From: Mytilus californianus
Lineage: Eukaryota
Direction: 5' to 3'
Length of the DNA stretch: 64,000 nucleotides
Assembly: GCF_021869535.1 (NCBI RefSeq)
Contig: NW_026262701.1
Span: forward strand, 1,178,001 to 1,242,000
Below are positions 590-53,309 of the stretch, one piece after another. Each line of letters starts with the position of its first letter. Position 1 is the stretch's first letter. Under the pieces are notes generated by a model. It did no database searches. It was not told where the DNA came from and saw nothing but the letters and a program-made list of their open reading frames with translations. The translations under genes were made by a program, and so were the position numbers.

Positions 590-1010
590 ATTCAAGTTCG
601 GCCTAATAATTTTCCTTATAGAAATAGGCTTTTTCATCATAAATAGGTAATTTAACGACTTATTCATAAAAAGAAGGGATTCAAAATATCGAGTGTTCGA
701 AAAAGTATCAAGTTTGTAGTCGAAAAAGTCATTGCTTTCTCCAATTAAAAACAAAATATGTTTTTGGCGTGACATTTAACGTGAGTTCGGCCTGCAAATG
801 TTCCTTTATATATAATTTCGGCATATATCTGAATTGTATGCTTAAAATATAAGGGTCAAATTATAATTATTGAATATACAACTTTGACACATAACATTCA
901 AAGTACAATATTTCGCTTAATCAGTTAATTATTTATGTTGGTAATATATTCCTGTTTTAATTTGACAAGTTGTAACTTGACCTACCCTTAATGAACATTG
1001 TGAAGGACAT
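590..1010 (+). mobile_element. Degenerate copy of the 5' ORF region of a Penelope-like element family
   Basis: Shares aagttcggc / ttcggcatatatctgaattg / aacattgtgaagg anchors, in the same order, with 18490-19180 and 22070-22610; broken reading REFGLQMFLYI*FRHISELY. Confidence 0.45.
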
Positions 1011-1084
1011 CGAATTCAAAAAAGGTCGAAATGAAATGCATGCAAAATCCATCTTAAAAGCAAAGCTTTAAAATAGATGTCCTC

Positions 1085-1530
1085 TTGAGACATGTAAGAC
1101 TTATTAAAACATGTTTTGTTTTGAGCGCAAACTGTCGTAGACTCGATCAGGTTTTGGTTGACTGTTATGGAATATCTTTTTCAAATAGGACCAGGAGTTG
1201 TTCCATATATCGTAACCACAACCCCGTCCTCTTTTACATACATAAAACAACTTATTACAGGGGATTTACTTGCCTGAGCAATACGACTGATACCACATGA
1301 GGAGTAGACAATATTATGTCTTCCGAGCACTTGAGAACAACCCAGGGTTTGGGTTCGTGTTTCTTTCTTTTTCTATGTGATTGTTGCTTTTCCTTTCGTT
1401 GTTTGGTCATAGTGTTGTCTGTTGTTATAAAATCAATTCACGAGATTTGAACATTGGGAAACTACTGTCGTCTTAATTTATTTCATTTACGATTTCCGAT
1501 ATCTCACTCGGTATCTTCTGTCTTGTTTTT
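1085..1530 (+). mobile_element. Degenerate 3' end/UTR of a Penelope-like element and its non-autonomous derivative
   Basis: gttccatatatcgtaaccacaacccc...ccacatgaggag...cttccgagcacttgag...gggttcgtgtt; reverse complement of the better-preserved copy at 11353-11770. Confidence 0.5.
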
Positions 1531-2439
1531 ATGGAATGATATTTAAAGTTTTTCAAATATTTTATCATTATTAGTCAAACGATTTGAAAGAATCAATAGT
1601 CCATTTGTTTGAAATCGCAAACTCACGTATATTTAAAACAAATATCCACATAATGTCAAATGTTATAAATGTATACCGCTTAATCGTTTGAGAAATGTTC
1701 AAGTGTACGGGAGAATAATTATTTAAGAATTTTGGAAAAATATCATTCAAACATTGTCACTATTATAGCGAACATGTGGCAATGAATTATGAACAAGTAT
1801 TTAGAAAAAAAAATTTAATGAACATTTCCTGGAAATATCAAAATGTTAACAAAACATTACGAACCTTTTTTGTAGACATTAGCTCTGACCGTAACCGTAA
1901 AACTATTTACATATATCATATCTTAATTATAATGTTCTGTATATTAAGTATATCTTGAATGTTTTCATAGGATTCTTATTTTTCAGTTTTAACATTTACA
2001 TTAAAAAACTCATTTTCTTAGTAATTTCTATTGTAAAAAAGTGAATTTACAATGTAATTAGTGTAAACAATGACAACGAAAGCGATATCAAAACTATGAA
2101 AACTATAACAGTATTTACTTCTATAGTTTCAGATGTTTTAAATATCATAGATCATCAATTAAATATTGACAAACATTACAACATGTTATAACTTTTGTAA
2201 TTGTTTTGCTTAAATCATTTATTTTACATCCATTTTTATTATAAGTGTTTAGGTTTCACACACCGAAGTCCACACCTTCAATTATTAATTTCATTCATAA
2301 CCTTCGCTATTAAAAGAAAACAATTTACATTTCTCATATAGGCAGATAAGAGAAAATATAAGAGAAAATCACAGTTAATTTATCGCCCAAACAAAACATA
2401 TTTAATGCATGCAAAGCGTTTGTCACTAGTAGTACCTGG

Positions 2440-2740
2440 TAGCGGCTGAGTCTTTATGAATTTCATGCATCCGAAGCAGTTATGGATTAACTATCCGCCA
2501 GCAGTGGTTTCGACCAAGTGTTAGTAAGTAAAAATGATACTTTATAAATGTGGTGCTTCAGAAGTTTTTATTTAATTTACCTGCATTTGGAACGCTCACA
2601 GACAAAAATTAAAAAGCCTCTGATATCTTCACAAGTAGAAAAGTTAGAAGCAATATAAACAAAAAGAGATATAAAAAGAATAGCCAAATAATGTTCAGGT
2701 CAATTTTGCCTTCATGAAGTTGAAACCTTAGTTTTGTTTT
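2440..2740 (+). mobile_element. PLE pseudo-LTR remnant (degenerate hammerhead motif on minus strand)
   Basis: ccagcagtggtttcgacc; tttacctgcatttggaacgctcac; aatagccaaa...ggtcaattttgcc...gttgaaaccttag all align to the pLTR at 45995-46190. Confidence 0.45.
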
Positions 2741-2771
2741 TATTAATTACTTACAACATGGAATTTTAAAC

Positions 2772-3337
2772 TCGAGAAAGAAGACGTAGATACTCTTTAT
2801 GAATATATTAAGGCTGTGAGGTCGTTGATACAAATCAGAACATAAATCTTTAATGACCCAAATGTTGTAAAACAACTGTCCTACCCCCATGACAAATATG
2901 TTGTTGTCCCCGCAGATAAAGTCCAAAACAACATCGTGTTTTTGTGCAAATCACATTACATAAACTGCTTGCTAAATGAATTATGTATTGACAATTCACT
3001 TGGAACTACCCCTACGACACTTACCAAGGAGGAAATCCGGGATATTGGTAGGTCTGTTCTATTTTCCTTTGGAATTTCAACCAAAAATGAAAAACTGGGT
3101 CTTCCTTCACTGTATTGGATACCTAAACTACATAAGTGTCCTTACAAACAACGTTATATTGCTGGGTCTTCCAAGTGCTCAACGAAACCTCTTTCTAAAT
3201 TAAAAAAATCAATTTTATCAGCAATGAAAGCCGGGCTTCAAAGTTATTGTAAAACTACTTATTTTAGAGGTAGCGGGAATCAGATGTGGATACTAAAATC
3301 TTCCAAAGATATTTTAGAGTACATACAATCTAAAAAG
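2772..3337 (+). mobile_element. Penelope-like retroelement reverse transcriptase fragment
   Basis: ORF 2936-3340 LPSLYWIPKLHKCPYKQRYIAGSSKCSTKPLS...QMWILKSSKD, preceded by KYVVVPADKVQNNIVF: typical PLE RT N-terminal motifs. Confidence 0.9.
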
Positions 3338-3383
3338 TAAAATAACAAAAATACCGAACTCCAAGGGATATTTAAAACGGAAA

Positions 3384-4894
3384 TTAATAAAAAAAGTCTA
3401 GGAGTTTATTTTGGAACAAATCGAGCTGAATGTGATAAGCTTAATACTGAAAAAATAATACAAAAATGTGACAAATTAATAAGTAATTGGAAAAAAAGAA
3501 ATCTTACAATGATAGGTAAAATAACAATTGTAAAATCTCTTCTTATACCAAACCTTACATATTTGGCTTCAGTTACAAACCTACCACATGAATTTATTCA
3601 ACAGTTTAAAACCCTTATTTATAATTTTATATGGGATGGTAAAAAAGAAAAAGTAAAACGAACCATATTAAGCAAAGATACTACTGATGGAGGTCTTAAG
3701 ATGACAGATATAGACAATTATATAACTGCACTACAAATAGCATGGATTAAAAGACTAACTGCAGATAATTTTGCTAACTGGAAAGTGATTCCGACATTTT
3801 ACTTAAATAAATTTGGTGCTAATTTCATGTTACTTTACATGAATCCAGATAACATTTACTCCATACAAAACCTACATAAAACTTTACCAAAATTCTACTT
3901 AGAAATTGTAAAATCCTGGTTCAAAGTACAAAATTTAAATAACACCAAACTCACGATGAATTTTAAAAACATTAGACAACAAATCTTATGGGGAAATAAA
4001 ATGATAAAGTTTCAAGGAAAGTGTTTAATTTTTATAAAATGGATAAAAGAAGGTATTATGTATGTTAATGATATTATTGACCAGAATGGTAACATCTCTC
4101 AAGATATAATATCTAATAAAATACCCTCAAAATCCAATTTAATGTTTGAAATTTCAAAAATTAAATACGCTATACCAAATGAATGGCTCAAGACACTTAA
4201 ATCAGATCAATCAATAAAATCAAAAGTAAAAAATAAACTTAACCTTTGTATTAAGACAAAAGAAAAAAATAAAATAACAAATTTACAAGCAATGGAAACA
4301 AAACAGATATACACATACATTAATAGTAGAAATGAAGACATACCTTCAGGTTTCTTAAAATGGAAACGTGTACTAAATTTAGATTCTTTAATCCCAATTA
4401 AATCAATGCTAAATTTCGTATTTACTTATTTAAAAGATAACAGATTAAAACTATTTAAATGGAAATTGTTGCATCATATCCTTCCTTGTAAACAACTGCT
4501 CTTTCAATGGAAGATAAAAGAAGACAGTAAATGTGACTTATGTAATGAAACAGAAGATTATAAACATTTTTTTCTGGAATGTCAATACTTTGAAGCTTTT
4601 TGGGAAAAGATCAAAATACTATTAAATAAAGTTAAAATTGGTCATCATATCCTAAACTACAGAAATCTCATAGTAGGATATAAAATCTGTGACATCAATT
4701 ATTATGACATAAATCTTTTGGTAACACTCATTACATTTTCCATCCACAAGTGTACTCACATTTCAAATTATAAAACTACAAATCTTGATGTATATGCCCT
4801 GTTCAAAAAAGATTTTTTGAACTATTTAAATATTTCGACACTAACAGGAGTTAAACATGGTAACATTTTGAAAGAAATAAGCTTGTACATATAA
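3384..4894 (+). mobile_element. L1/Tx1-clade LINE, 5'-truncated ORF2 C-terminus (post-RT region plus zf-RVT)
   Basis: Frame open from KSLGVYFG (~3396) through ORF 3509-4894: GKITIVKSLL, FIWDGK, GGLKMTDI, C-terminal CDLCNETEDYKHFFLEC zinc motif. Confidence 0.9.
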
Positions 4895-5439
4895 TTATTA
4901 TTTTATGCATATATGTTATATGCTATATTTATTCAGCAATACACGTGTCTCATCATTATTTAATCTTTAGACCACGTGTTGTGGACTTCGTCATGATCAT
5001 GATCAGTGATAAAACATTAAACCCCAATTATCCTAAAAGCATCCTTACTTTTTTTTTTAAATCACATATTCACAAATAACTAAACTGATATAAACACATC
5101 AATTCGCAACCAAGTATGTATACCTACATAATTAATAATAAGTACAAGCAGCTTCGCCAGTTAGCTTGCCTCCATCGTATGATCGTTGATCAACAGGTCA
5201 TGACCAGGTCAACTAACATATACAGAGTCAAAGCGGTCCACGATTGTAATTTTTCCGGAAATTAATTTCTGAAGTAATCTGTTGTATTGATACATAGAAT
5301 GTAAATCTAACAATTTATTATTATTAATGTACTGAGCAATCTCCCTGTTTGTTCAGTAAAACTAATCCTACAGGGGTGCCCTGTCAAATGCTGTAGACAT
5401 GGTATTCATTATAACAGCAATAGTGCAATAAATCAGATT

Positions 5440-5990
5440 TTAGATAAAAAAAATAAAAAAATAAAACGGAAATTCATATATAAAATGGCAAAATCAAAAG
5501 CTCAAGCACCTCAAACAAATGGACAACAACTGTTATATTCCTCACTTGGTACAGGCATGTCATAATGTAGGAAATGGTGGATTAAATCTGGTTTTATAGA
5601 TAGCTAAACCTCTCACTTGTATGACAGTCGCATATAATTCCATTATATTGACAACAATGTGTAAGCAAAAAAACCAGACAAAATAGGTAAAAATGTCAAA
5701 AATGGGGATACAGCAGTCAACACTGTAATATAATCTTAATCACTATACAAATAAATAACTATTTTAATGAAGAAAAACAAAATGGCATATAGACACTCTG
5801 TAGACAAAGAATGAAGCAAAAATGAAAGACTAGAATACAACACAAAAAATGGACTAAACAGTAATAATAAAAAAAAAAACACTATAACACGTAGTAAAGA
5901 TAATAAACAACGTCAGTACCTAGAATCCATACTTTAAGACCATCATGTATTATTTGTGAATTCGATACAGAATATTGATCAACAAGGTAT
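5440..5990 (-). repeat. Abundant mytilid interspersed repeat (PLE-derived non-autonomous family)
   Basis: aaatggcaaaatcaaaagctc...ggtggattaaatctggttttatagatagctaaacctctcac; reverse complement of 20878-21345 and 34770-35330. Confidence 0.65.
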
Positions 5991-6750
5991 TGATATCTTC
6001 CAATAAATTTTTTTTAGAAAAAGGACGAGACGTTCTTTGACATAACCTTGGCTCATTAACTTTCTGCTCATACACTGGTAATGTTTAATAAAGTCTGAGT
6101 AGTATCTGTAAGCTCTTAGTACCGAATGAGTTGGGAAATGTATATCCCATATGCAGGTAAAGTTGGTATATTGCTGCTAAGGCCAGATCATATATCAAAA
6201 TTAAAATCGTCTCGTTTGTCATAGATGTTGGTGCTGGGTTGACCGCTTATGTCAAATTCGAGGTATAAGTCTAAAATGAGGCAGAGGAAGCCGTGTCTGT
6301 TGTTTCTGTAATTTCTAGTTCAGGAAGATATATTAATGGAAAGAACATCATCAATATATCTGAATGTGAAATCAAATCATCTGGCTTCTTTGATCTTCTT
6401 GTTTTTGACAAGTGTCTAAAGCAACTCCGACTGTATGAAAATAAGAAGAGGTCGACAAGGAGAGGCGCGCAGTTAGTCCCCATAGAAATGTCGACAACAT
6501 GGACAAGTTGTTGTAAAAGATTACCTCCAAATTCAACAAATATTGTCAATTAGAAACTCTAGCATACTGATCACTTGTTCTTCTGTGTAGCATGTTTAAC
6601 CTTTTATATGCCAAATATGCCGTGTGGTATCCCAAAGCAATCAATTGATAGCTCTTTCAATTTAAGAATATTTTGTTTTGCAATAGTAGTAAAACATTTG
6701 ACTTTTCTACACTTAACACAAGTAATCCCTATTCCAAACTAAAAAAACAA
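5990..6750 (-). mobile_element. Penelope-like RT fragment
   Basis: Minus ORF 6271-6549 FVEFGG...SMGTNCAPLLVDLFLFSY, then frameshifted FRYIDD region and DKRDDFNFDI. Confidence 0.85.
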
Positions 6751-6751
6751 A

Positions 6752-8735
6752 TTGAAAGACTTGGTCCTTGTTTGTTTCATAAAAAAAATTGGCCAACGTA
6801 GAAACAAGTATCTTGTCTTAGGGAGGGATACACCTCACTTTGTAAAAAATCACTCTGATTCAAATAAACAATTCTCTGAAACTGATATTATCAAAATGCT
6901 TGATTTTTTGATTGACAACATATTTGTTACGTTTGGAGGACCTGTTTTTTAAACAAACATTCGGCATTCATACAGTCAGCATACAGACCACGTAATTCAA
7001 CTGAAACTGCATTGGCTAGAGTATATCATGATATAAATGCGGCTTTAGATAAACAGTCATCAGTTGTATTGGTGCTCTTGGACCTTTCTGCTGCATTCGA
7101 TGTCATAGATCACAGAATTCTTCTGGAACGTCTGTCATTTGCGTATGGCATAACTGGTTGCGCCCTCGAATGGATTAAGTCGTATTTAATGGACAACTGG
7201 GTGAACTATTTTTCAAAACTTGAACTATGTCTTTCCGACATTAGTTCATGGATGTCAACAAATATGTTAAAATTGAATCAAGATAAAACCGAACTGATCA
7301 TATTCACACCGAAACATCTGAAGGCAGGTGTGTCAAATCTCCAACTCAAAGTCGGCAATAATGTGGTAAGTAGTGTATCCTGCGTGAAAAACCTAGATGT
7401 ATATTTTGATCAACATCTTACGATGGAACGGCAAGTTTCTGCCATAGTAAAATCTGGTCATTTCCACATTAGTAATATTGGACGCATTCGCAGCTTTATA
7501 ACAAAAACCGCTTGCAAGACACTAGTGAACAGTCTAGTAACATCCAGACTTGATTATGGGAATATTCTGCTGAACGGTATTAAGAAGACTGCGATGAACA
7601 GATTACAAAAAGTACAAAATACAGCAGCCCGTTTTATCACCAGGACAAGAAAACATGAACATATTACTCCGATACTTGCTGATTTACATTGGTTACCCGT
7701 CCAATACCGACCACAATACAAAATACTTACATATGTGTACTGCGATTTGAATGGCATTGGCCCTGCTTACATTTGGGAACTAGTCAATTTACAAGTGCCA
7801 AACCGATCTCTGCGTTCAAGCTCTACAAAACAACTTACCGTTCCAAAAGTGAGAAAGAACGGTGAAAGACAATTTGATTGGGCAGCCGCATCTCTATGGA
7901 ACAATCTCCCGAACAGTTTAAGACAATGCAAGTCCCTAGAGTGTTTTAAATCTCAGCTAAAAACTCGTTTTTATCGAATTGCTTTTTAATTCGATCTTTT
8001 TCATTTTCTCTTTTATTAGGTTTTACTTGTTTTGTATCAACTTTTAATGCAAGTTTTTTTATTCCTTTTTAGATTTTTTGCTTGTTTTGCATGCTTTTAG
8101 CCTATATTGCTAATTTTTAAATTTTTTGTTTTAAAATGTATTTGCGTATTGACCTTTTATTTTATGGTAGGCATTTTTGTTGTATTTTGTTTATTTTTTC
8201 TGAATCAAATTTGTTTTATGTTTTTGTCATTGATTTGTTTTCATTACCATTTTGAATGTACAGCGCCTTAGCGTAATTTTTATTTTTTATATAGGGCGCT
8301 TTATAATTTTTCATTATTATTATTATTATTCCCATGGAACCAACTGTGCTCCCCTCTTGCCGACTTGTTCCTTTATTCATATGAGGCTGACTTCATACAG
8401 GAACTTTAAGGAATAATGAAAGGAAGATAGCAGTATCCTTTCACTTCACTTTCCGACATATAAATGATGTTCTTTCGCTAAATAATTCAAAATGTGGTGA
8501 CTTTATTGGATGCGTCTATCCCATCAAACTTGAGATAAGGGATACACCAAATACTGTTAAATCTGTCTCATATCTTGCCTTACATCTCGAAATTGACAAT
8601 GAGGGTCGGTTAAAAACAAAACTTTACGACAATACAGATGATTTCAGCTACCCAATTTTGATCTTTCCATTTCTATGTAGCAATATTCCAGCAGCGCCTG
8701 CATACGGAATATATATTTCCCAGTTGATACGATAT
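6752..8735 (+). mobile_element. Penelope-like RT fragment split by an L2 insertion (pieces 6752-6969 and 8331-8735)
   Basis: SETDIIKMLDFLIDNIFVTFGG...cggcattc | L2 | ccatggaaccaactgtgctcccctcttgccgacttgttc (the PMGTNCAPLLADLFLYSYE motif resumes). Confidence 0.85.
6970..8330 (+). mobile_element. L2/CR1-group LINE, 5'-truncated and internally deleted, (ATT)n tail
   Basis: QSAYRPRNSTETAL; ORF 7012-7989 LDLSAAFDVIDH, LKLNQDKTELI, RLQKVQNTAAR, LHWLP, LWNNLP; 3' gcgccttag...gggcgcttta followed by (att)6. Confidence 0.9.
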
Positions 8736-8869
8736 TTTTAGTTTTTATGTTGTGTTGTGTTGTGTTTTGTGTAATGTTGTTTGTCTTTTTCTTTTTAGCC
8801 ATGGCGTTGTCAGTTTATTTCCGACTTACGAGTTTGAATGTCATTTGATATTTTTCGCCTTATAAAATC

Positions 8870-9695
8870 ATTTCAGCCGATGATAACCTCGGGGACTTAC
8901 AGTCAACCAAAGTGGTATCAAAAGTAAGAATCTATATGACCAAATGGGACCTAAAGAGAAAATACAAAATCAGCTATGGTCAACTTTGCTTTAGAGAGTT
9001 GGAATCTCAGTTTTTCAGTGATTTCGTAATTAAACGACGGGGGAGTTTAGAAAATATTGTATAAAGAATGTACCAAAATACTGACTACTGAGTTAATGAT
9101 ACCTTCATGGACTGCTAGTCCACTAGCAGTTGTATCGTCTACTAGCAGTTGTATCGAACAAGTGTTTTGCAATGAATAGTCTATAAATTTCTGACGTCCA
9201 AAGCGACTTTTTGGAATTTATCTAACAGGATTATATATTGAGCTTCATAATTTAAATATGTTACATGGAGATATATATAAGTGTTTTTTAATACAAAACT
9301 CACAACACAATAGGCTCTGACCGTCGTAATACTCAAATTCTTGTAAAAAATATTCCGATTAATGTATAGTATTAGTTGAATTTTCCTTTAAATTGTTGCA
9401 GGAATTTTCTCAGATTTTGTATATTGAATAAATATAAAACTGTATTTGTCCAAGGCAGGAAACTGCGATAAAACTACAAATACTCTATGTGTTCATGGTA
9501 CTTTCAGCGAAAACATCTATACAATTCTTAAAAAGAATACTTTATTCAATTTTAGAATAAAAATTTACGATGAAATCATTGTAATGCATAAATATTTCTA
9601 ATACATTGTAATAATCCCAGTTTTATTTAAATTATTCTTTGATTAGTTATTTTTTTAATGTCTTTTTGCATTCAAGTTGTCAGTTTTTACTACAA
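8870..9695 (+). mobile_element. PLE pLTR plus 5' ORF region, degenerate copy
   Basis: Collinear with 17450-18370 (tatggtcaactttgctt, gtccactagcagttgtatcg, caaggcaggaaactg, ataatcccagtt). Confidence 0.55.
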
Positions 9696-9699
9696 TTCC

Positions 9700-11345
9700 A
9701 GGTGTAATATCACTAAATCATAGTACGTCACACCCGGTTGCATACGAAAAAGGGTCGAAAAAAAATATTCCCTTGAATTTGACAGTTGTAGGAAATTAAT
9801 CCTACATTGCATTGAAGTTAAAAATTTCTGAGTCATAAACATATATCTTGGGTGTTTCAAAGCACCATTTTTTTTTATTTGGTGTTTCTATAGAATATTT
9901 TGGAAACTTGAGGTTACATGGTTTCTAAAGCTTGTACACAGGAAAACAAAGGGGTGAACATTTGATTGGTTAACTTCCGGTGATGGTTATTATCTTATAT
10001 GCAATGAAATGTTAAATGAAATTTTGTCTGTAGTACTGGACAGGTTAAAACTTTACTCATGCCAAGTATTTCTTTATTTGAAACATAGATAAATTCTGCA
10101 CAATTTTTTGAAAAGTGCAAATTTAACAGACTAATTGGGGAAAAACAATGGTGGTATTACACCTAATATGGAAAGCTGTACATGCACCTTTGACCTTGTA
10201 TGTACTCTTATTTGTTAAAATTCATGGTATTTATGTGAAATACTACAAAAATGAAATATTCTGAGTAGATTGAGTCTCAAAAACACATTTTATGAGAAAA
10301 TTGCCTTGAAATAGGATTCTACCATGAATATTAGTAGACAGAGCAAGCCATACTCAGTGTTTTGGGGAGCTTTTTCTGACTTTTTCTCCTTATTTCTTAT
10401 ATTTTGCTATAATAGAAAAATTTTCCTTCAGTAATACTTTAATAAATATACAGTTATAAGTAAATGAAATTATTTTTGAAGCAGTAACAACAAATTATTC
10501 ACTACAAGGAAAGCTTTTATGTCCCTCTCTGGAGCGCGGCGTATAGGACAAGGTACGATAAGGGGCATTTTTGGCCCCCTCTCAAAATAAGTTTATATTC
10601 ATATTATTGATAGTCTTGGAATAGAAACTTGAAAAAATAATGATTTGTTTATGTTCCGTTGAATGAATGGTTGCCTAGCAACGGTTTTATCACTTGTAAA
10701 TTTGCTTTATCTGTGCAAATTAACACAATTCCTTATTGAATTGATTGTGTAAGAATAACTTGAAGTTAAGAATGCGAAGTCACTATAATTTCAGTTTACT
10801 AAATGTTTAGCAACAACCTAGCAACAAAATTATTGCAACGGTACATTTTTTTAAATTTTTGCCATCTGAGGTATACATACAGCAAATGTTTGAAGATTAA
10901 GCTTACATAAATGGTATTTCAGTCTTATATGATATTGTAGTCATCATTTTTCTTTTATGAAGTTCGTATTGAGCTTAGCAACACAAATGTTGACGAGCAA
11001 CAACCAAATATAATTAAATTAAAGACAACTACAAAAATTAATTTATTTGTTATTTTATGGTACAGATAAGAATAAAAGCAAACAAGAGTGGTGTATAATG
11101 ATAATAACTATCAGTGAGAAATAAAAGCAATTCATATTTTAGTTCATGTTTCTCAACAGCTTAGCAACGGTTAAATAAAGGGTTTTTTATTTTCTGAAGT
11201 TTGAATTTCGCCATTTAAAAAAATATTTGTCATATTTTGATGACTGCTTTTTTTTGACAAAGTTAATCAAGCATAGCAACACATATGGTGCTTAGCAACT
11301 GCCAACATGTTTAAATTAAAGACAATTATAAATGACATATTTCTC
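9700..11345. repeat. Unclassified probable non-autonomous DNA element(s) rich in TAGCAAC motifs
   Basis: No ORF; repeated (c/t/a)tagcaac; perfect GTTGCCTAGCAAC at 10670-10682; termini not resolved. Confidence 0.3.
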
Positions 11346-11352
11346 GACAAAA

Positions 11353-11770
11353 TAGAAGAGGGACGAAAGATACCAGAGGGACAGTTAACTCATAGATCGA
11401 AAACAAACTGACAACGCCATGGCCAAAAATAAAAAGACAAACAGACAAATAATAGTACAGATGACACAACATAGAAAACTAAAGACTAAGCAACACGAAC
11501 CCCACCAAAAACTGGGGGTGATCTCAGGTGCTCCGGTAGGGTAAGCAGATCCTGCTCCACATGTGGCACCCGTCGTGTTGCTTATATTATTACAAATCCG
11601 GTAAATAGTCTTATTCGGTAGGTCACATTCGTAAAAAGGGAAGGATATTGTAGTTACGACATATGGAACATATCCGATATCATCTGTGAAACGGTTATTC
11701 CATAACGGTCAACCAACTCGTGATGGCGTCCTTAAAATTTATGAAGGGATGATTTCAACTTCACCATTGA
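11353..11770 (-). repeat. PLE 3'-end-derived mytilid repeat
   Basis: aagagggacgaaagatacc...acaacgccatggc...cacgaaccccaccaaaaactggggg...gcagatcctgctccacatgtggcacc; same family at 16675-16895 and 40110-40470. Confidence 0.7.
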
Positions 11771-12164
11771 TTGCATGAATACAAATCCGATTGTCCGATC
11801 TGTGTAAAAAAACTAGCAGAAGCAGTTCATTAGTAGTAAGCTTAGTAATCATCAACAACTTAGCAAGGGAACTAGTGATAAGGAGCGGTTCAAATGGGTT
11901 TTCTTTTATTTGAAATATGAATTTTTATTAAAAGTGTTCATTTTGTTTACATCCGATTTCATTCATACGATCGTACATAAAAGCATTGGTATTTATCTAT
12001 GTCATGAACATTCTCATACATTCATTTTCATTTAAACTTTTATCATTCCATCCAATAGAATTGGTGATGTTTTTCTTAACATTAGCAACTTCAACAATTT
12101 ATTATGTTGCAAAGGAAAGCTTTTTAATGGCACTCATGGTAGTACAATTTACACAATGATTAAA

Positions 12165-14062
12165 TTAGCATGTACAGTACCAACCTGTAATGTCATCATT
12201 GCTGTACTTATCCATAGACTGTAGGCTTTCGATGACGAGTGTCTTGATGATAACGTAACACGGAGTAAGTTTTGTCGGTCCTTGCATATTTGAAGTGTGT
12301 AATTGTCATCGTTTATGTGACTCTCTGTATACCGTGGAGCAAGCTGCAGCTGATACACACCCATGGTAATTTCTCTGATTGCTTAAGAGGTCAACTTTGG
12401 AAAGTCTAACACATTATCAACACCATTTACTATAGTATACACCGCTTTCTTTTGAATTAGATTGTTATCTTCCACAATTTGTTGAAAATGATCGTTGAAG
12501 CATTTGTTGACCGATCTCGTCATTTCCAAAATCGTTTATCAAGGGAGCACGAAAACAATTGATGAGCGCACTCACTATCCTTACAAAATCTCCAATGTGT
12601 GGTACATAATGGTTAGAAATAACCTTATCGAAAAAACGCCATTACTTGATACGGCCATTCGCGCTTTCGACCATCCACCTTACTTTAGTTATCGGCCGAG
12701 CTGCGTTTGCCTCCTCAGTGGGGTGTTGTTTCATTCCTTTCTTTATATAAAACGGCATCTATACCTTTAAATTCATATTTTCTAAGAATTTTGGAGCGCT
12801 TCTGAATCTTCTATCCACCACAAGAACATCATTCTCCTGAACCTAATTATTAATGTCCTCGGCATTTGTCTCAAATAAATGTTTTGTAATTGAAGCATCA
12901 TAATTATGATAATCAGCAAAGTATGGACCTATGACATTCAAGATGTAGCCATCTGCTCCAACAATTAATATAGGTTTAACTAAAGGTCTTCCTTCATGCA
13001 TGCTATATGTCATCTTTTGAAATTGGTGAAACGAGCTTTCTTGTATATACAAGTAAGTACCATCTAGAACAAGGATAGCTATATCATCGTTTTCGTTTGC
13101 AAATAAGGTTTTTGCTGTTGGTGTTGTATGTTTTTGAGAAAATTCTTGATGAGTAATGTGGTTAAAGCCTAAAAAGAGGGCCCGAAGCTCTGCATCAATT
13201 ATTCTCTTGTTGAATGAACAGCTGGTCGTGATTGGTGCGATTTTAAGGAGAAGAGAGTGCTTAATATAGAATTTGATAAGCCTGTGCGAAGCTTCACGAG
13301 AAGAATGGCAAGACATGTCCTTACTGAACGCACCTCAGAGTTTCGTAGATCCTTTACGTGCAAAGCGACTGCATCAAATTGTTCTCTTGTAAGACCAGTC
13401 AAATTAACGTAGTCATCATCTGAAAGTGAAGACGAAATATCAAAATTGAGCTTGCCAGTATCTTTTATGACTGCCCGAGTTCTTTCCAACAGCTCTGATA
13501 TGTCCGTACGGTTACAATATGATGATGATGAGGATTGTTGTACAGTTTCCAATGCATTTTGTTTAAATATTTGCCAATAAGATGGTCTGGACAACATCTG
13601 CTATTTGTCGATATAAAAATGCCCTAATTAATAAGAACCTGAGTTGCTGCTTCTTTTGGAACAACCACTAGTCGATGTCTCCTAGTGTTTTCCTTCTTGC
13701 AAATTATACACCTCCGATGAGATTTCGATGTAGATGAAATGCTGAGTTGTATTGTTTTCTGGCTAATAACTTCAGCAGGACCCGGCAATCCCTGTTCACA
13801 ATTTTCATCATAATCTGTTGCTACATCTACTAATCTTTGTAATTGGAGTTCTCTTCGGATTCGCGATCGACATTTGGAGCATATTATATCCTGCACATAT
13901 ACATTCCTTTTGATCAAAGACTCGATGTAGTTTTGTAGTGGTGTGTTGATGACTGGTCGTCTATTATTTTCTTTTACATGTGTTTTTAAGCATATGACAC
14001 AACTATAGTTTCGTATTCTTGGCCTCTCATTTTTTGGCTAATCCAACCATTTCTTTGCAACC
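12165..14062 (-). pseudogene. PIF/Harbinger-ISL2EU-type (DDE_Tnp_4) transposase, frameshifted, with N-terminal Cys pairs, HTH and truncated C-terminal SWIM
   Basis: CVIC...CSKC and CIIC (13624-14020); LTGLTREQF...LRTGLSNSILSTLF HTH; ILVLDGTY, GRPLVKP, DASI; further downstream [10 protein letters not shown] and ITGWYCTC*. Confidence 0.85.
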
Positions 14063-35794: not shown

Positions 35795-37313
35795 TTACAA
35801 AATGGAGCATAAATCCTGATTCAGTTCTTTGATCTTCTTCTCCAAAGCGTTTTTTAATTTATCTATTTGATTTATTCGAATTTTGTTTTCTTCTAGTAAT
35901 AAGAAGTATTCATGGGAAAATAACCATCCATAGTTGATATTTCATCAGCGACTTCCTGTGCATATGTTTGCTGTTCGTGTGGTGATGCTAAGTTTTCTAA
36001 AGCTACAATACGTTTACCACATCTTTCATATAGTTGTTGAACCTCTTCTACAGCCATTTTGTCGATGAATTCATGAATATCCATTCGATTTCCCTTTACG
36101 TCTCTTATCTCATTTTTTCTGACCATTACAATCATTGTGTGATCTAGAAAATTAGTGTTTCCAAATAAATTTCTAAGATCTTTTATTGCTTCTTTTTCTT
36201 CATCTGTTACTATGTTTGGCGAAAGAACAATTATAAACGCATGAGGTCCTGGCGATAGAAATCCAATACTTTTAGTAACTTCTGTTATGACTGCCTTCTG
36301 CTTCGTATTTAATATTCCAGGCGTATCAACAACTCTTATCGTCTTTCCAGATGGAAGCTTGCCAGTACCTTCATTAGTTTCTGTTGTCACTGATTCTCCT
36401 GAAGGAAGCAACACAAAACAATTATAACCAACCAGAGTGTTTCCAAAAGCACTTTTCCCGCATCCTGTTTTTCCAATTAGTGCAACTCTTATTCTGAAAT
36501 AAATCAATCATACTACGTTATTTTACCGAGAAACATACATCTTTCCTTGAATAAGTGATATATTGCGTACATTGTATTGTGCACTATAAACAACACTTCA
36601 TGTTGGTGAATCAGTCATAATGACATCTTTTACAGATGTAACAAAAAGTTCCTAGTTTGACTCTGTGTAACAGTAATCTTTTTTAAACTGCATATTATAG
36701 TAAACGATATGAAATTACTATCCCTTAAAAAAGAGAAAAAGACAATAAGGTACAGGAAAAGTTAGGAATAGTTAAAATGTAAAAAAAACACCTTTAAGAA
36801 TATAAAATTGAGAATGGAAATGGGGAATGTGTCAAAGAGACAACAACCCGACCATAGAACAGACAACAGCAGAAGGTCACTAACAGGTCTTCAATGCAGC
36901 GAGAAATTTCCGCACCCGGAGGTGTCCTTCAGCTGGCCCCTAAACAAATATATATACAATTTTAGTGATAATGAACGCCATACTAAACTCCAAATTGTAC
37001 ACAAGAAACTAAAATTAAAAATAATACAAGACTAACAAAGGCTAGAGGCTCCTGACTTGGGACAGGCGCAAAAATGCGGCGGGGTTAAACATGTTTATGA
37101 GATCTCAACCCTCCCCCTATACCTCTAGCCAATGTAGAAAAGTAAACGCATAACAATACGCACATTAAAATTCAGTTCAAGAGAAGTCCGAGTCTGATGT
37201 CGTATGATTGCAATAGACTATCTTTTAATCACTTTGTTAACAAAAAAAGTAATGTTATGATTGTTGAATTATTGCATTTAAACTTACGCATGCGGATCTC
37301 TTTCTTCTGCCAT
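35795..37313 (-). CDS. GIMAP/IAN (AIG1-domain) immunity-associated GTPase; two coding exons (37313-37288, 36493-35795); 1-nt frameshift near 35915; C-terminal coiled coil plus CaaX (CSIL)
   Basis: IRVALIGKTGCGKSAFGNTL (G1), ESVT (G2), VVDTPG (G3), PGPHAFIIVL, CGKR; exon 1 ATGGCAGAAGAAAGAGATCCGCATGC|gtaagt and tttcag|A ATA AGA are phase-compatible; exon 1 was identified by eye. Confidence 0.85.
36805..37200 (+). repeat. Mytilid repeat inside the GIMAP intron
   Basis: aattgagaatggaaatggggaatgtgtcaaagagacaacaacccgacc family; also at 39115-39620, and reversed at 48700-49075 and 61250-61670. Confidence 0.7.
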
Positions 37314-41978: not shown

Positions 41979-43602
41979 CAGTTTGCCAAAAGTTAATCAC
42001 CACCTATTTTCATTGCATCGAAATGTTTTTCATTTTAAAAAAGTCAGTTATTCCTCAAAAAAACATTCAAGTAGCAATTTTGCTAACATATACCATAAAC
42101 AAACCATAAATTAGGTTTGGTCAATTATGCAGGTTCTATGCATTTAAATTTTGCGTTCATAGAAATAGTGCAAATTACACAGAAACGGATTTTAAGTTTC
42201 ACTGTGATTTTTTTTTTACAACAATTAATCACCCAACATCATTAAAATTCTCTACAAATAATCTTTGGGATGTTCGTAAATTTAATGTCAATATTTGAGT
42301 CAATAGGATGTGTAACCACCTCTCTTCCGGTACAGTTCCATAACACGGCGTCTCATACTCTGTACAAGCCTTCTGAACTTTACTTTAGTTGAGGAAATCT
42401 ATTCCATTCATCAACAATTGCCACTCTTAATTCGCAAAGATTTTGCAAAGGTGGATCTCTGATTGAGATTTCTGCCAATGGCATCCCAGACATGTTCGAT
42501 AGGGTTCATGTCTGGAGACATGGAAGGCCAAAAGATAGTGTCGAAGGCTTCTTGCTCTTTGTACTCGGTTACAATCCTTGCCTTGTGTGGTCTAGCATTG
42601 TCGTCCATGTACAAGGGTCTTGACGCAAGTGGGTGATTATCAAAATGAGGGACTACAATGTTTCTATGCACCAAATCCCTGTATGTCTGTCCGTTCATGT
42701 TACCCTGCAGAGTATGCATACCCAGCTTACAACGATATGAGAAGCATCCCCATACTGTAACACCACAAGCACCGAATGCAGTCGTTGGGAAAATGTTGTT
42801 TTGGTCATAGGCAGTTTTATTTTCCCACCAAACTCGTATTCCGCGTCTACTGGTCGTAGCAGAAACCGACTCTCATCGTACCAATGAATTTTTTGCCAGC
42901 TTCTCATGTTCCAGCGACGATGGTCATTAGCCCATTGAAACCTAATTATACGGTGCCTGGCTGTGAGGGCAGGTCTCTTGACAACACGACGTGCTCTTAA
43001 GTTGCCTCTATGAAGTCGACGGACCAATGTTCGAACACTAACACGACCACCTGGAGGCCAGTGGTGTCTAAGCTGCGGGACAGGAGTAAATAGGTTGGCT
43101 TTAGAACGACGAATAAGCAGTCTGTCATCACGAAGGGTAGTTAAACGGGGTCTTCCGGACCTTGGTCTATTATTTACAGTTCCTGTGTCAACATGATGTT
43201 GTAAAAGTCTGACAATGACGGTATGATTAACATTGAAATGGTTACCCAAGCTCCTAGTACTCCTACCGGCATTTGACATGCCAATTCCTTGCCAAAGTTC
43301 AGCCACAGATAACGTACGCCTTGCCATATTATACAATGACTTGATGAAAGTGAAGTTTCACCTGTACGCGGGACAATAGGAGATGATTTAAAGGTATCGA
43401 AACAGTGTATTTGTAAAAGTGCAGATGACCTTTAATAAAAAGTTGCTTGAAGGGTTTATCGGAGTTCAATCTTTTTGGTCGTAATGCATTTTCTTAGTGT
43501 ATGTTAAAGGCAATTCATAATATCAAACATTAATAATTTTTCGCAATAGTTAAAAAAATATTGCCATTTATATTTAGGTGGTGCGTAACTTTTGGCGGAC
43601 TG
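41979..43602 (-). mobile_element. Tc1-family DNA transposon (DD34E), 1624 bp, TA TSD, transposase frameshifted
   Basis: TIRs ta|cagtttgccaaaagttaatcaccaccta and ta|cagtccgccaaaagttacgcaccaccta; PRSGRPR, WYDESRF, DDNARPH...34 aa...SPDMNPIE; frameshift near 42845. Confidence 0.95.
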
Positions 43603-51123: not shown

Positions 51124-53190
51124 TCTTATTATTATTACTTACAATATTTTTATAGCGCATTATCTAATTAAAATTGCTCTAAGCGCTTAACATAAAAACA
51201 ATCAATGCAGTTAAAAGAGGTGTTTAACATTAAAACCATCAATACAATAAGAATGAATTAAAATTTTGAACAATTAAAAAATATTTAAAATACATATACT
51301 ACAACGGAAAGAACAAAAGATAAAAGTTACTGTCAGTATAAGAAGTTAAATGTGATAACTGAAAATAATGTTTTTTTTGAAATATTTCTTAAAAAGTTCG
51401 ACGGAGTGTTCATGTCTTAGATGGCTAGGAAGATTGTTCCAGAGGCTCGCAGTAGCTTTGTCGAAACGTCTTTCTCCGTAATTTTTGGTGCGTACACGTG
51501 GTTGTATTAGTCACATTGCATTTTCCGATCTACGAGATCTTGATGGTTGCTAACACGGCTGGTAATCTACACACGCAGAACAATCGGTTCTGCAATGAAA
51601 ACCGTGAGAGGATTTTCCGGTTATGCGTGAGTGGAGTAATTGTCACCGCTTCAAAAGGTATGTACATTTCTAAATTGCAATTTTCTAATTCAACTGATCA
51701 AAATATTGAAATTCGGAGAATGCTATGCTGTGGTGAATACTTTAACAAAGAGACACATGTATCATTTACTGTTGTGCATGGAGTAAAACTCCTACAAAAT
51801 CAATCGTCCCACGAGTAATTGCCGAAAAAAGTGACATTTAAATTTTGAGATGGTTCTACTAACAGACCTACAAGTTCAGATTTAGTTTTTTTCTGTCAAC
51901 GGGATTGAATGTCGTTTTGGGCGGCGTGTACGCTGTCCGAAGGTGATAGACGTCTTAATAAATCTAAAAACTGCCAATTTTCATTATTTTATGCGTGAGG
52001 GGATCGGTTCTGATTGAGGACATCGTGAATGCATGAGGGGAAGTGCAATCATATTTTTATATCGAAAAATGCAACAATCACTTCAAGAAAGGCAAGTAAC
52101 TTGCATAGTCTTATTGAAGTTTATAATAAATATAAATTGACAATGGAAATGGAAATGGCTATAATATATACAACGTAAATATAATTGGTTTAGATTTATA
52201 ATTGACTATGTTTTTTTCTCGTGTGCATGTATTAAGACTTTAATCTATGTTTTAGATGGATAGAACACGCCACCATTGCCTGCAGTGTGATAAGTCATAT
52301 ACTCAACGTCCAAAGCTGAACTTCCATGTAAAGCTGGTACATGAAAACACATGAGTCGAGAAAAGTCACAAGGCCAAAGATTAAAAAAATGTTTGCACTT
52401 CCCCTCACGCATTCACGATGTCCTCAATCAGAACCGATCCCCTCACGCATGAAATAATGAAAATTGGCAGTTTTTAGATTTATTAAGACGTCTATCACCT
52501 TTGGACAGCGTACACGCTGCCCAAAACGACATTCAATCCCGTTGACAGAAAAAAAACTAAATCTGAACTTGTAGGTCTGTTAATAGAACCATCTCAAAAT
52601 TTAAAGGTCACTTTTTTCGGCAATTACTCGTGGGACGATTGATTTTGTAGGAGTTTTACTCAATGCACAACAGTAAATGATACATGTGTCTCTTTGTTAA
52701 AGTATTCACCACAGCATAGCATTCTCCGATTTTCAATATTTTGATCAGTTGAATTAGAAAATTCCGATTTAGAAATGTACATACCCTTTGAAGCGGTGAC
52801 AATTACTCCACTCAAGCATAACCGGAAAATCCTCTCACGGTTTTCATTGCAGAACCAATTGTTCTGCGTGTGTAGATTACCAGCCGTGGCTAAGCCATGT
52901 AGAATTTTGAAAGTATATAAAAGCAGTTTATACTGTATCCGGTACTGCACCGGGGTCCAATGAAGTGACACAAGAACTGGTGTAATATGATGGTGTTTCG
53001 TGGTACGTGTGACGAATCTAGCTGCCGTATTTTGTACTCGCTGTAACTTATTTACTAAACTGGCATTCACTTCATATAGAAGAGCGTTTCCGTAGTCTAG
53101 ACATGACGTGACAAGCGAACAGACTAGCGTTTTACAGGCATCCTCGGTGATATATTGCCGAATTCGACCAATGTTTCGCATTTGAAACAT
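51124..53190 (-). mobile_element. L2 LINE 3' fragment, split by a foldback element
   Basis: RNIGRIR..SCLDYGNALL..KLQRVQNTAAR..LHWTP..HGLA (52894-53190); QPSRSRRS..PRVRTKNYGE (51400-51548); (AAT)n tail at 51126-51137. Confidence 0.85.
51554..52888. mobile_element. Non-autonomous foldback DNA transposon: ~495 bp TIRs, CACGG...CCGTG ends, 5-bp TSD GCTAA (Transib/RAG-like signature)
   Basis: gctaa|cacggctggtaatctacacacg ... cgtgtgtagattaccagccgtg|gctaa; arms 51554-52048 and 52393-52888 are near-perfect reverse complements. Confidence 0.9.
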
Positions 53191-53309
53191 ATTTAGATTA
53201 CTATAGTTTGTGCCCAAAAATTAAGAAGACCTTAATTGAACAATTAGGAACTAGGTGTGAGTTATGATAAGACAAAGGATTTTTATTTTTAAAGTTTAGA
53301 AAAACATGC

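What the first reader, a model, noticed from the sequence alone, without database searches (positions are those of the whole stretch)
51554..52888. Foldback transposon with ~495-bp TIRs, CAC termini and a 5-bp TSD: candidate non-autonomous Transib/RAG-like element
Seen: the arms are near-perfect reverse complements (only a few substitutions over ~495 bp), the ends are CACGG...CCGTG, GCTAA is duplicated exactly, and there is a 344-bp spacer with no transposase. Established: CAC ends with 5-bp TSDs characterise Transib and ProtoRAG/RAG-like transposons, whereas CAC-ended Chapaev/EnSpm elements make 2-4 bp TSDs. Inference: a young MITE family moved by a Transib/RAG-type transposase elsewhere in a bivalve genome. 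Such long TIRs are atypical for that superfamily, and a transcript would form a ~0.5 kb dsRNA stem.
Basis: partly seen in the sequence, partly recalled or inferred. Interest (0 to 1): 0.7.

Follow-up and report, generated by a model that had tools for sequence, protein, structure and literature searches.

The report
Gene-less palindromic mussel DNA transposon
This is one copy of a roughly 80-copy family of gene-less, hairpin-shaped cut-and-paste transposons in a mussel genome; its CAC ends and 4-5 bp target duplications place it in the broad transposon clade that includes RAG1's relatives, but the enzyme that moves it was not found, so the specific RAG/Transib link stays unproven.

Summary
Window 51554-52888 is a 1,335-bp element with inverted arms of 506 and 507 nt (15 mismatches, 1 indel), CACGG...CCGTG ends and an exact GCTAA on both sides.

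It is a real transposon family. The genome holds about 164 termini, so about 80 or more copies of 0.4-3.0 kb. All examined copies are gene-less. The basic form is a near-complete 1.8-kb palindrome with arms of about 857 bp and a 74-nt loop. The window copy is a deletion derivative that itself transposed.

- Of 34 unique copies, 22 have exact 5-bp TSDs (one more has one mismatch), but 10 have exact 4-bp TSDs.
- Targets are AT-rich, not GC-rich as for Transib/RAG.
- The terminus shares only CAC with the Transib and protostome RAGL TIR consensus sequences.
- No autonomous copy or Transib/RAG1-like gene was linked to it.
- The genome does hold intact CMC/Chapaev-type transposase ORFs, whose hallmark is CAC ends with 3-4 bp TSDs.

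Best reading: a non-autonomous member of the CMCT clade (CACTA/Mirage/Chapaev/Transib), with Transib-type versus Chapaev-type mobilisation unresolved. Earlier notes of this scan report similar gene-less CAC/5-bp families elsewhere in this genome. This is ordinary transposon biology with a few unusual details.

The parts
51549..51553 (.). Left target-site duplication GCTAA
   Evidence: identical to 52889-52893 and not extendable; other copies have unrelated 4- or 5-bp duplications at the same boundary.
51554..52059 (+). Left arm core (506 nt), terminus CACGGCTGGTAATC...; this is the part conserved across all subfamilies (family positions 1 to about 505)
   Evidence: inverted repeat; subfamilies share only positions 1 to about 505-515; depth step and divergent flanks at 51554.
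51583..51635 (+). Outer cluster of subterminal direct motifs: ATCGGTTCTG (51583-51592), CCGTGAGAGGA (51602-51612), GCGTGAGTGGA (51625-51635); candidate transposase-binding sites
   Evidence: The same motifs are mirrored in the right arm at 52807-52840.
51993..52041 (+). Inner cluster of the same motifs: GCGTGAGGGGA (51993-52003), ATCGGTTCTG (52003-52012), GCATGAGGGGA (52031-52041)
   Evidence: Mirrored in the right arm at 52400-52448.
52060..52351 (+). Inner part of the left arm of the full-length palindrome (family positions 507-798). Its mirror image has been deleted from the right side of this copy.
   Evidence: window element positions 1-798 align to both arms of the 1,776-bp copy L012. 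L012 arms are about 857 bp with a 74-nt loop.
52256..52354 (+). Short ORF (32 codons plus stop) encoding one C2H2 zinc finger (C-x2-C-x12-H-x4-H); a decayed fragment of a tandem C2H2 array, not a transposase
   Evidence: zf-C2H2_4, E 0.007, below cut-off; in L012 the frame continues into a second finger with a TGEKP-like linker; no parent gene above about 75% identity outside the family.
52352..52381 (.). 30-nt filler at the deletion junction of this subfamily
   Evidence: The same junction is present in copies L002 and L007, which have different flanks and TSDs.
52382..52888 (-). Right arm (507 nt), reverse complement of the left arm core, ending ...CCAGCCGTG
52889..52893 (.). Right target-site duplication GCTAA (this copy is native to the host LINE sequence)
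   Evidence: a paralogous LINE contig resumes exactly at 52889.
52894..53217 (-). Host sequence: C-terminal part of a non-LTR retrotransposon ORF, interrupted by the element
   Evidence: ORF runs into the element; 64% identity, E 6e-44, to the RT-bearing ORF at window 7012-7989. RVT_1 match in that ORF.

Best explanation
The element is one copy of a non-autonomous, hairpin-shaped (foldback-type) cut-and-paste DNA transposon family of a Mytilus mussel. It encodes nothing useful. It is moved in trans by a DDE transposase of the CMCT clade (CACTA/EnSpm-Mirage-Chapaev-Transib). That enzyme recognises the CAC...GTG ends, and probably also the repeated GCGTGAGNGGA / ATCGGTTCTG motifs in the roughly 505-bp arms. 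It integrates with a 5-nt stagger, or in about 30% of events a 4-nt stagger, into AT-rich DNA. The ancestral form is a near-perfect 1.8-kb palindrome, probably made by inverted duplication of one transposon end together with a fragment of a C2H2 zinc-finger sequence. The window copy belongs to a 1.3-kb subfamily that lost the inner 290 nt of one arm plus the loop and still transposed. Shown: family, boundaries, TSD spectrum, target composition, architecture, absence of coding capacity. Inferred: the clade of the enzyme, the role of the motifs, the origin of the palindrome. Within the clade I cannot decide between a Transib-type and a Chapaev/CMC-type enzyme.
For: The family is real: 146 DNA matches and 164 termini. 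There are 34 unique copies with unrelated flanks. Depth steps occur at both ends in two other labelled organisms. TSDs: 22 exact 5 bp, 1 of 5 bp with one mismatch, 10 exact 4 bp, 1 with none. The ends are CAC...GTG in all but one of the paired copies listed (L029 reads CAATG). The CMCT clade is defined by CA..TG ends and 2-5 bp TSDs (PMC12730594). No ORF above noise is found in any form up to 3.0 kb. No pair of termini lies more than 3.0 kb apart, except two pairs: one was examined and holds unrelated repeats (C79), and one could not be fetched (C165). Palindromic architecture. The deleted subfamily shares its junction but has different TSDs. Subterminal motifs occur four times per arm in direct orientation. 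Candidate enzyme sources exist in the genome: 57 Transposase_21 matches and 11 Chapa-like matches, with open frames up to 1,115 aa.
Against: No transposase was linked to these ends. A 4/5-bp TSD mix fits neither canonical Transib (precisely 5 bp) nor canonical Chapaev (3-4 bp). Arms of 500-850 bp are atypical for both. Repbase and Dfam could not be consulted.
Confidence: 0.8

Rival explanations
1. Sub-hypothesis A: the mobilising enzyme is a Transib or RAG-like (RAG1L) transposase. The 4-bp duplications reflect a RAG-like flexibility of the integration stagger.
For: 5 bp is the modal TSD (22-23 of 33), and 5 bp is the hallmark of Transib/RAG (PMC1131882, PMC7204232). No 2- or 3-bp TSDs were seen. 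RAG1/2 intramolecular transposition in vitro gave 69% 5 bp, 28% 4 bp and 3% 3 bp (PMC1131882), close to the 70/30 split here. TSD and TIR features are labile within Transib (bioRxiv 10.64898/2026.08.26.747230). Earlier, mostly unchecked scan notes list many CAC/5-bp long-TIR families and RAG1-fold transposases in this genome.
Against: HzTransib and protostome RAGL make invariably 5-bp TSDs (PMC4840297, PMC7204232). Targets are AT-rich (TSD 26% GC against 33.5% background), not GC-rich. Terminus positions 34-35 are G and T rather than the conserved A and A, and only CAC matches CACAATG (PMC1131882). The AAA at positions 8-10 of the RAGL consensus is absent. Pfam RAG1 and RAG2 models find nothing in the genome, which is weak evidence because the controls were silent. 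A bivalve-wide ORF survey found a single Transib signature (PMC10294476).
Confidence: 0.35
2. Sub-hypothesis B: the mobilising enzyme is a CMC-type (Chapaev-like) transposase whose integration stagger has widened to 4-5 nt.
For: Chapaev hallmarks are invariable CAC...GTG termini and 3-4 bp TSDs, with A/T-rich targets in Chapaev3 (PMC4079192, PMC3014272). 10 of 33 copies have 4-bp TSDs, and targets are AT-rich. The genome holds apparently intact ORFs of 1,085-1,115 aa with a RAG1-N-terminal/Chapa-like zinc domain, and 57 Transposase_21 matches. CMC is present in all molluscs surveyed (PMC10294476). Clusters of subterminal repeats, as seen here, are typical of CACTA-type elements (own knowledge).
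Against: Two thirds of copies have 5-bp TSDs, which no described CMC lineage produces (2-4 bp; 10.64898/2026.08.26.747230). No 3-bp TSDs were seen. No CMC gene lies near a family terminus.
Confidence: 0.4
3. The element belongs to another superfamily with short TSDs or long TIRs (hAT, Sola, Ginger, P/Galileo, MULE-type Foldback).
For: Long TIRs and foldback shapes are known in P/Galileo, Sola2 and Drosophila FB (own knowledge). Sola makes 4-bp TSDs (own knowledge), and Sola is reported in bivalves (PMC10294476).
Against: The third terminal base is C, whereas hAT ends always have G there and make 8-bp TSDs (PMC1131882). FB and Galileo make 9- and 7-bp TSDs (own knowledge). Ginger1 targets CCGG/CCGT (own knowledge), unlike the AT-rich sites here. 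The arms contain no tandem repeats. A 5-bp majority does not fit Sola.
Confidence: 0.07
4. It is not a mobile element but a local palindromic duplication or an assembly artefact.
For: None beyond the palindromic shape.
Against: There are about 80 dispersed copies with sharp common ends and unrelated flanks. The same boundaries appear in independent sequencing runs.
Confidence: 0.01

Closest known systems
Transib non-autonomous elements (e.g. Hopper/Kodama, Transib-N families)
   Same: CAC...GTG termini, a modal 5-bp TSD, gene-less derivatives of about 1.3-1.8 kb, and autonomous partners that are rare or absent from assemblies (PMC1131882, PMC4411706, 10.64898/2026.08.26.747230).
   Different: 30% of TSDs are 4 bp. 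Targets are AT-rich. There is no nonamer-like block at positions 31-38. The arms are 506-857 bp instead of TIRs of about 38 bp. No Transib transposase was found.
Chapaev / Chapaev3 (CMC) transposons
   Same: Invariable CAC...GTG ends, 4-bp TSDs in a third of copies, A/T-rich targets, and intact Chapa-domain transposase ORFs in the same genome (PMC4079192).
   Different: The majority of TSDs are 5 bp, outside the 2-4 bp range of CMC. There is no TWA target motif. No link to a transposase gene was found.
Protostome RAGL transposons (oysters, Modiolus, Bathymodiolus)
   Same: Bivalve host, CAC start, 5-bp TSDs (PMC7204232).
   Different: The RAGL TIR consensus CACTWMCAAAC..., with its conserved AAA, is not matched. 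RAGL TSDs are invariably 5 bp. RAGL TIRs are about 15-17 bp. No RAG1L or RAG2L gene was detected here.
Foldback-type / hairpin non-autonomous derivatives of DNA transposons (e.g. Drosophila FB, Galileo)
   Same: The element is almost wholly palindromic, lacks coding capacity, and has potential to form hairpin DNA or RNA.
   Different: FB arms are built of tandem repeats with 9-bp TSDs and Galileo makes 7-bp TSDs (own knowledge). Here the arms are unique sequence with 4-5 bp TSDs.

Membership tests
CMCT clade (EnSpm/CACTA-Mirage-Chapaev-Transib), umbrella | 5'-CA...TG-3' termini | tested here: met
   The ends are CACGG...CCGTG in the window copy and in all but one of the paired copies listed (L029 reads CAATG). 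Definition from PMC12730594.
CMCT clade (umbrella) | TSD of 2-5 bp | tested here: met
   22 of 5 bp, 1 of 5 bp with a mismatch, 10 of 4 bp.
CMCT clade (umbrella) | [quoted passage not shown] | not testable with these tools
   No autonomous partner was identified. Flanks of candidate genes could not be fetched.
Transib | Precise 5-bp TSD | tested here: inconclusive
   5 bp is modal (about 70%), but 10 of 33 copies have exact 4-bp TSDs. These are called atypical for Transib in PMC1131882, and HzTransib is invariably 5 bp (PMC4840297).
Transib | 38-bp TIR: CACAATG-like heptamer, 23-bp spacer, A-rich nonamer; positions 1-3 and 34-35 conserved | tested here: not met
   Positions 1-3 are CAC, but positions 34-35 are G and T, and no A-rich nonamer follows a 12- or 23-bp spacer (sequence, against PMC1131882).
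Transib | [quoted passage not shown] | tested here: not met
   TSDs are 26% GC (5 bp) and 22% GC (4 bp), and flanks 29%, against 33.5% in all fetched loci.
Transib | Transposase of about 700 aa homologous to the RAG1 core | tested here: inconclusive
   Pfam RAG1 gives 0 hits in the genome, but the control was silent too. Transib transposases may escape domain models (10.64898/2026.08.26.747230).
Protostome RAGL transposon | TIR consensus CACTWMCAAACKTYKBB with conserved AAA at positions 8-10 | tested here: not met
   The terminus here is CACGGCTGGTAATCTAC. Positions 8-10 are G, G and T (against PMC7204232).
Protostome RAGL transposon | Convergent RAG1L-RAG2L gene pair in the autonomous element | tested here: inconclusive
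   Pfam RAG1 and RAG2 give 0 hits in the genome. The controls were uninformative.
Chapaev (CMC) | Invariable 5'-CAC ... GTG-3' termini | tested here: met
   Definition from PMC4079192.
Chapaev (CMC) | 3-4 bp TSD (TWA in Chapaev3) | tested here: not met
   Only 10 of 33 are 4 bp, none is 3 bp, and the majority are 5 bp. There is no TWA motif.
Chapaev (CMC) | Chapaev-type transposase as partner | tested here: inconclusive
   Intact Chapa-domain ORFs of 1,085-1,115 aa exist, but none lies near a family terminus, and their ends could not be read.
hAT | 8-bp TSD; third terminal base G | tested here: not met
   TSDs are 4-5 bp and the third base is C (PMC1131882).
Non-autonomous TIR element (MITE-like / foldback) | TIRs, TSDs, multiple dispersed copies, no transposase ORF | tested here: met
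   At 1.3-3 kb it is larger than a classical MITE.

The most novel reading that the evidence does not exclude
The family reports an undescribed mussel transposase lineage on the Transib/Chapaev border. Its transpososome would integrate with a flexible 5- or 4-nt stagger (70:30, like RAG1/2 in vitro) into AT-rich DNA, and it would accept ends embedded in 0.5-0.85-kb palindromic arms. That would show that the '5 bp = Transib, 2-4 bp = CMC' rule breaks down within one active family.
Probability: 0.3. Interest if true: 0.5.

Novelty: new member of a known kind. Interest (0 to 1): 0.3.

Why it matters
For genome annotation, this is a clear and well-bounded repeat family that can be added to a mussel transposon library. 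It also warns against calling 'Transib/RAG-like' from CAC ends plus one 5-bp TSD. Across copies the TSD is 5 or 4 bp, targets are AT-rich, and the genome's detectable candidate enzymes are CMC/Chapaev-type.

If the enzyme were identified, the family would be a natural data set on how integration stagger varies in the clade that gave rise to RAG1.

The long perfect hairpins are also potential sources of genome instability or hairpin RNA, but the two RNA runs examined show almost no transcription.

Tried and rejected
1. Autonomous copy with the same ends. I listed termini, fetched the longest elements and 10 kb inward from 14 unpaired termini, and scanned for ORFs. I found only nested or unrelated pieces:
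- a PIF/Harbinger DDE_Tnp_4 ORF in L046;
- an Integrase_H2C2 fragment in L033;
- a Helicase_C ORF beside L048;
- LINE and BEL-like ORFs.
The 18-kb pair on C79 is two separate fragments with a LINE and tandem repeats between them.

2. Pfam RAG1 and RAG2 on the genome gave no hits. The controls were silent, so this is not evidence of absence.

3. The CMC/Chapa hits could not be followed up.

4. Paralogous empty site. The reconstructed 34-nt empty site has no match at 3 or fewer mismatches.

5. Orthologous empty allele. None was found in the contigs of two DNA runs. Instead, a paralogous LINE contig showed 34 extra letters at the site.

6. C2H2 ORF as a transposase N-terminus. Rejected: it is a Krüppel-type tandem finger fragment with a TGEKP-like linker, it decays differently in each copy, and it scores below the Pfam cut-offs. 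No parent gene was found.

7. RSS-like nonamer. An A-rich block (ATGAAAACC) lies at positions 42-50, but the spacing of 34 nt fits neither a 12- nor a 23-bp spacer, so I treat it as chance.

8. Earlier scan notes by sequence returned nothing.

9. PMC3093488 and PMC2727372 are not held, so the Sola and Yuan-Wessler details rest on my own knowledge.
Full report
**Observation**

The sequence is as described, with small corrections.
- Window 51554-52888 (1,335 bp) begins CACGGCTGG and ends CCAGCCGTG.
- The arms are 51554-52059 (506 nt) and 52382-52888 (507 nt). They differ by 15 substitutions and one 1-nt indel in a T-run, so they are 96.8% complementary.
- GCTAA lies immediately outside both ends (51549-51553 and 52889-52893) and cannot be extended.
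- The 23-nt terminus occurs twice in the window against 0.00 expected.
- Folded as RNA, the element forms a stem of about 505 bp with MFE -942 kcal/mol.

**It is a transposon family**

- The window's own genome is 1.65 Gb in 175 contigs. Earlier follow-up notes of this scan call it a Mytilus mussel.
- The whole element finds 146 DNA matches there. The 34-nt terminus finds 80 forward and 84 reverse matches at 2 or fewer mismatches, against 0 for the reversed control. That means about 80 or more copies, plus more diverged variants.
- Paired termini give elements of 0.43 to 3.0 kb.
- In DNA contigs of public runs from two differently labelled organisms, summed depth jumps from about 50-480 in the flanks to 1,000-14,000 inside, exactly at 51554 and 52888. 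Several contigs of organism B diverge into unrelated sequence just before 51554.
- So the boundaries are real, and the family is high-copy in at least two labelled taxa.

**Architecture**

- The commonest forms (about 1.7-1.85 kb) are almost complete palindromes. In L012 (1,776 bp) the arms run about 857 bp around a 74-nt loop.
- The window copy aligns to L012 over positions 1-798 on the left but only over the outer 507 nt on the right, with 30 nt of filler between. It is therefore a deletion derivative that lost about 290 nt of the inner right arm plus the loop.
- The same junction occurs in L002 and L007, which sit in other chromosomal places with other TSDs. The asymmetric 1.3-kb form was therefore itself mobilised.
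- Subfamilies share only arm positions 1 to about 505-515 and differ internally. This marks the roughly 505-bp core as the functional end.
- Each core carries the motif (AT)GCGTGAGNGGA four times in direct orientation: two near the tip and two at the inner edge. Two of the four adjoin ATCGGTTCTG. These are plausible transposase-binding subterminal repeats, but that is inference.

**Coding capacity**

- No form up to 3.0 kb has a transposase ORF.
- The short ORF in the window spacer (52256-52354) is one C2H2 finger. In L012 the frame continues into a second finger with a TGEKP-like linker. The Pfam matches are below the cut-offs, with E about 4e-4 to 7e-3.
- It is a decayed fragment of a Krüppel-type zinc-finger array, either captured or ancestral, and not a transposase. 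No parent gene above about 75% identity was seen outside the family.
- Larger copies contain foreign pieces: an Integrase_H2C2 fragment (L033) and a PIF/Harbinger DDE_Tnp_4 gene (L046).

**Target-site duplications**

| TSD class (34 unique copies) | Copies |
|---|---|
| Exact 5 bp | 22 |
| 5 bp with one mismatch (L035) | 1 |
| Exact 4 bp | 10 |
| None | 1 |

- The 4-bp class is not a register artefact, because a 5-bp reading fails in those copies.
- The TSDs have no consensus beyond A or T at the first position (20 of 22).
- They are AT-rich: 26% GC (5 bp) and 22% GC (4 bp), with flanks at 29%, against 33.5% over all fetched loci.

**Age**

- The two arms of one copy are about 96% alike.
- Each arm is about 2-4% from the family consensus. 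For the window copy the figures are 2.0% and 2.4%.
- Full-length relatives are 91-97% identical to the window copy.
- The family is moderately young, not brand new.

**Search for the enzyme**

- I listed termini, fetched the longest copies and 10 kb inward of 14 unpaired termini, and found no long copy that keeps family sequence.
- Pfam RAG1 and RAG2 models give no hit in the genome. The tool's controls were silent, and Transib transposases can escape domain models (bioRxiv 10.64898/2026.08.26.747230), so this is weak evidence.
- The genome has 57 matches to Transposase_21 (CACTA/CMC), with open frames up to about 1,000 aa. It has 11 matches to the RAG1 N-terminal (Chapa-like) zinc region, four of them in open frames of 1,085-1,115 aa without stops. 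These fit Chapaev-type transposases (PMC4411706).
- None lies within 30 kb of a listed family terminus.
I could not read the ends of these genes or the 8.7-kb interval between inverted variant termini on C165. I did not try to obtain that DNA by another route.

**Comparison with known families**

- The CMCT clade (EnSpm/CACTA, Mirage, Chapaev, Transib) shares CA..TG ends and 2-5 bp TSDs (PMC12730594). Both features are met.
- Transib is defined by a precise 5-bp TSD, a 38-bp TIR (CACAATG, 23-bp spacer, A-rich nonamer, with positions 1-3 and 34-35 conserved) and GC-rich targets (PMC1131882). HzTransib makes invariably 5-bp TSDs (PMC4840297). Here only the CAC and the modal 5 bp agree. Positions 34-35 are G and T, targets are AT-rich, and 30% of TSDs are 4 bp.
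- Protostome RAGL elements have the TIR consensus CACTWMCAAAC... and invariably 5-bp TSDs (PMC7204232). This is not matched beyond CAC.
- Chapaev has invariable CAC...GTG ends and 3-4 bp TSDs, TWA in Chapaev3 (PMC4079192, PMC3014272). The ends agree, a third of the TSDs agree, and the majority do not.
- RAG1/2 intramolecular transposition in vitro gave 69% 5 bp, 28% 4 bp and 3% 3 bp (PMC1131882), much like the spectrum here. A 2026 preprint shows TSD length to be labile within Transib.
- A bivalve-wide ORF survey found CMC in all molluscs but one Transib signature in total (PMC10294476).
- I therefore file the family under the umbrella clade. I leave Transib-type (about 0.35) against Chapaev/CMC-type (about 0.40) open.

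**Context and a loose end**

- The element interrupts the C-terminal part of a non-LTR retrotransposon ORF on the minus strand.
- One contig from organism A is a paralogous copy of that LINE. It joins 51549 to 52889 with 34 other letters between, and these restore the LINE reading frame (...ILHGLAPVYLEELIIAVQPSRS...).
- So the window's LINE copy lacks about 34-35 nt flush with the outer edge of the left GCTAA. Either this LINE copy already carried the deletion or it arose with the insertion. I cannot tell which.
- No orthologous empty allele was recovered, and a reconstructed empty site has no match in the genome.

**Expression**

Two raw-read RNA-seq runs gave 13 and 16 reads, mostly partial, out of about 10-15 million records read. 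There is no sign of notable transcription. No small-RNA library was available.

**Earlier notes of this scan**

- Many first-reader notes, and two follow-ups (s1-307219, s1-335351), describe other gene-less long-TIR CAC/5-bp families in this same genome, also without an identified enzyme.
- Other follow-ups report RAG1-fold or CMC-type transposases elsewhere in the genome (s1-279518, s1-328135, s1-318182).
- I used these only as leads. My own Pfam searches independently show CMC/Chapa-type genes.

**Verdict**

The element is a genuine non-autonomous foldback-type DNA transposon, a new member of a known kind. The specific Transib/RAG attribution is not established, and several Transib features tested here are not met.

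Noticed in passing
window 51540-51553 / 52889-52900: Compared with a paralogous LINE contig, the host LINE copy lacks about 34-35 nt (encoding ...APVYLEELIIAV...) flush with the outer edge of the left TSD. This is either a pre-existing deletion or a deletion linked to the insertion.
   Followed up: partly
G000 C165:98539152-98547854: Inverted pair of a diverged terminus variant (...CTACACAAGC) lying 8.7 kb apart, a candidate long copy. No RAG1, Chapa or Transposase_21 hit falls inside it. The DNA could not be fetched.
   Followed up: no
G000 C132:49175575, C121:90913443, C107:1768943, C121:52610369: Open frames of 1,085-1,115 aa without stops that match the RAG1 N-terminal (Chapa-like) zinc region. 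They are probably intact Chapaev-type transposase genes.
   Followed up: no
L046:459-1241 (G000 C121:87936997-87937779): A PIF/Harbinger transposase ORF (HTH_Tnp_4 plus DDE_Tnp_4, E 1e-49) follows the truncated first 399 nt of a family copy, a nested insertion.
   Followed up: partly
L033:1136-1519 (-): A 127-aa ORF with an Integrase_H2C2 zinc domain (E 2e-20) lies inside a 2.9-kb family copy. It is a captured or nested retroelement or Ginger-like fragment.
   Followed up: partly
window 35893-36507 (-): A 204-aa ORF of the AIG1/GIMAP GTPase family (E 2.6e-36).
   Followed up: partly
window 42695-43336 (-): A Tc1/mariner-type transposase fragment (HTH_Tnp_Tc3_2, E 2.6e-10).
   Followed up: partly
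window 3509-4894 (+) and 7012-7989 (+): Non-LTR retrotransposon ORF fragments (zf-RVT and RVT_1). The second is 64% identical to the LINE fragment that hosts the element.
   Followed up: partly
G000 C121:25536216-25537706 and 25540763-25542252; C88:39791750-39793308 and 39795060-39796616: Two places where near-identical family copies recur 3.3-4.5 kb apart in the same orientation. This suggests local segmental or tandem duplications that carry the element.
   Followed up: no
G000 C46:29259788-29260217: A 430-bp copy with both termini intact, the smallest member seen. It may mark the minimal mobilisable unit.
   Followed up: no
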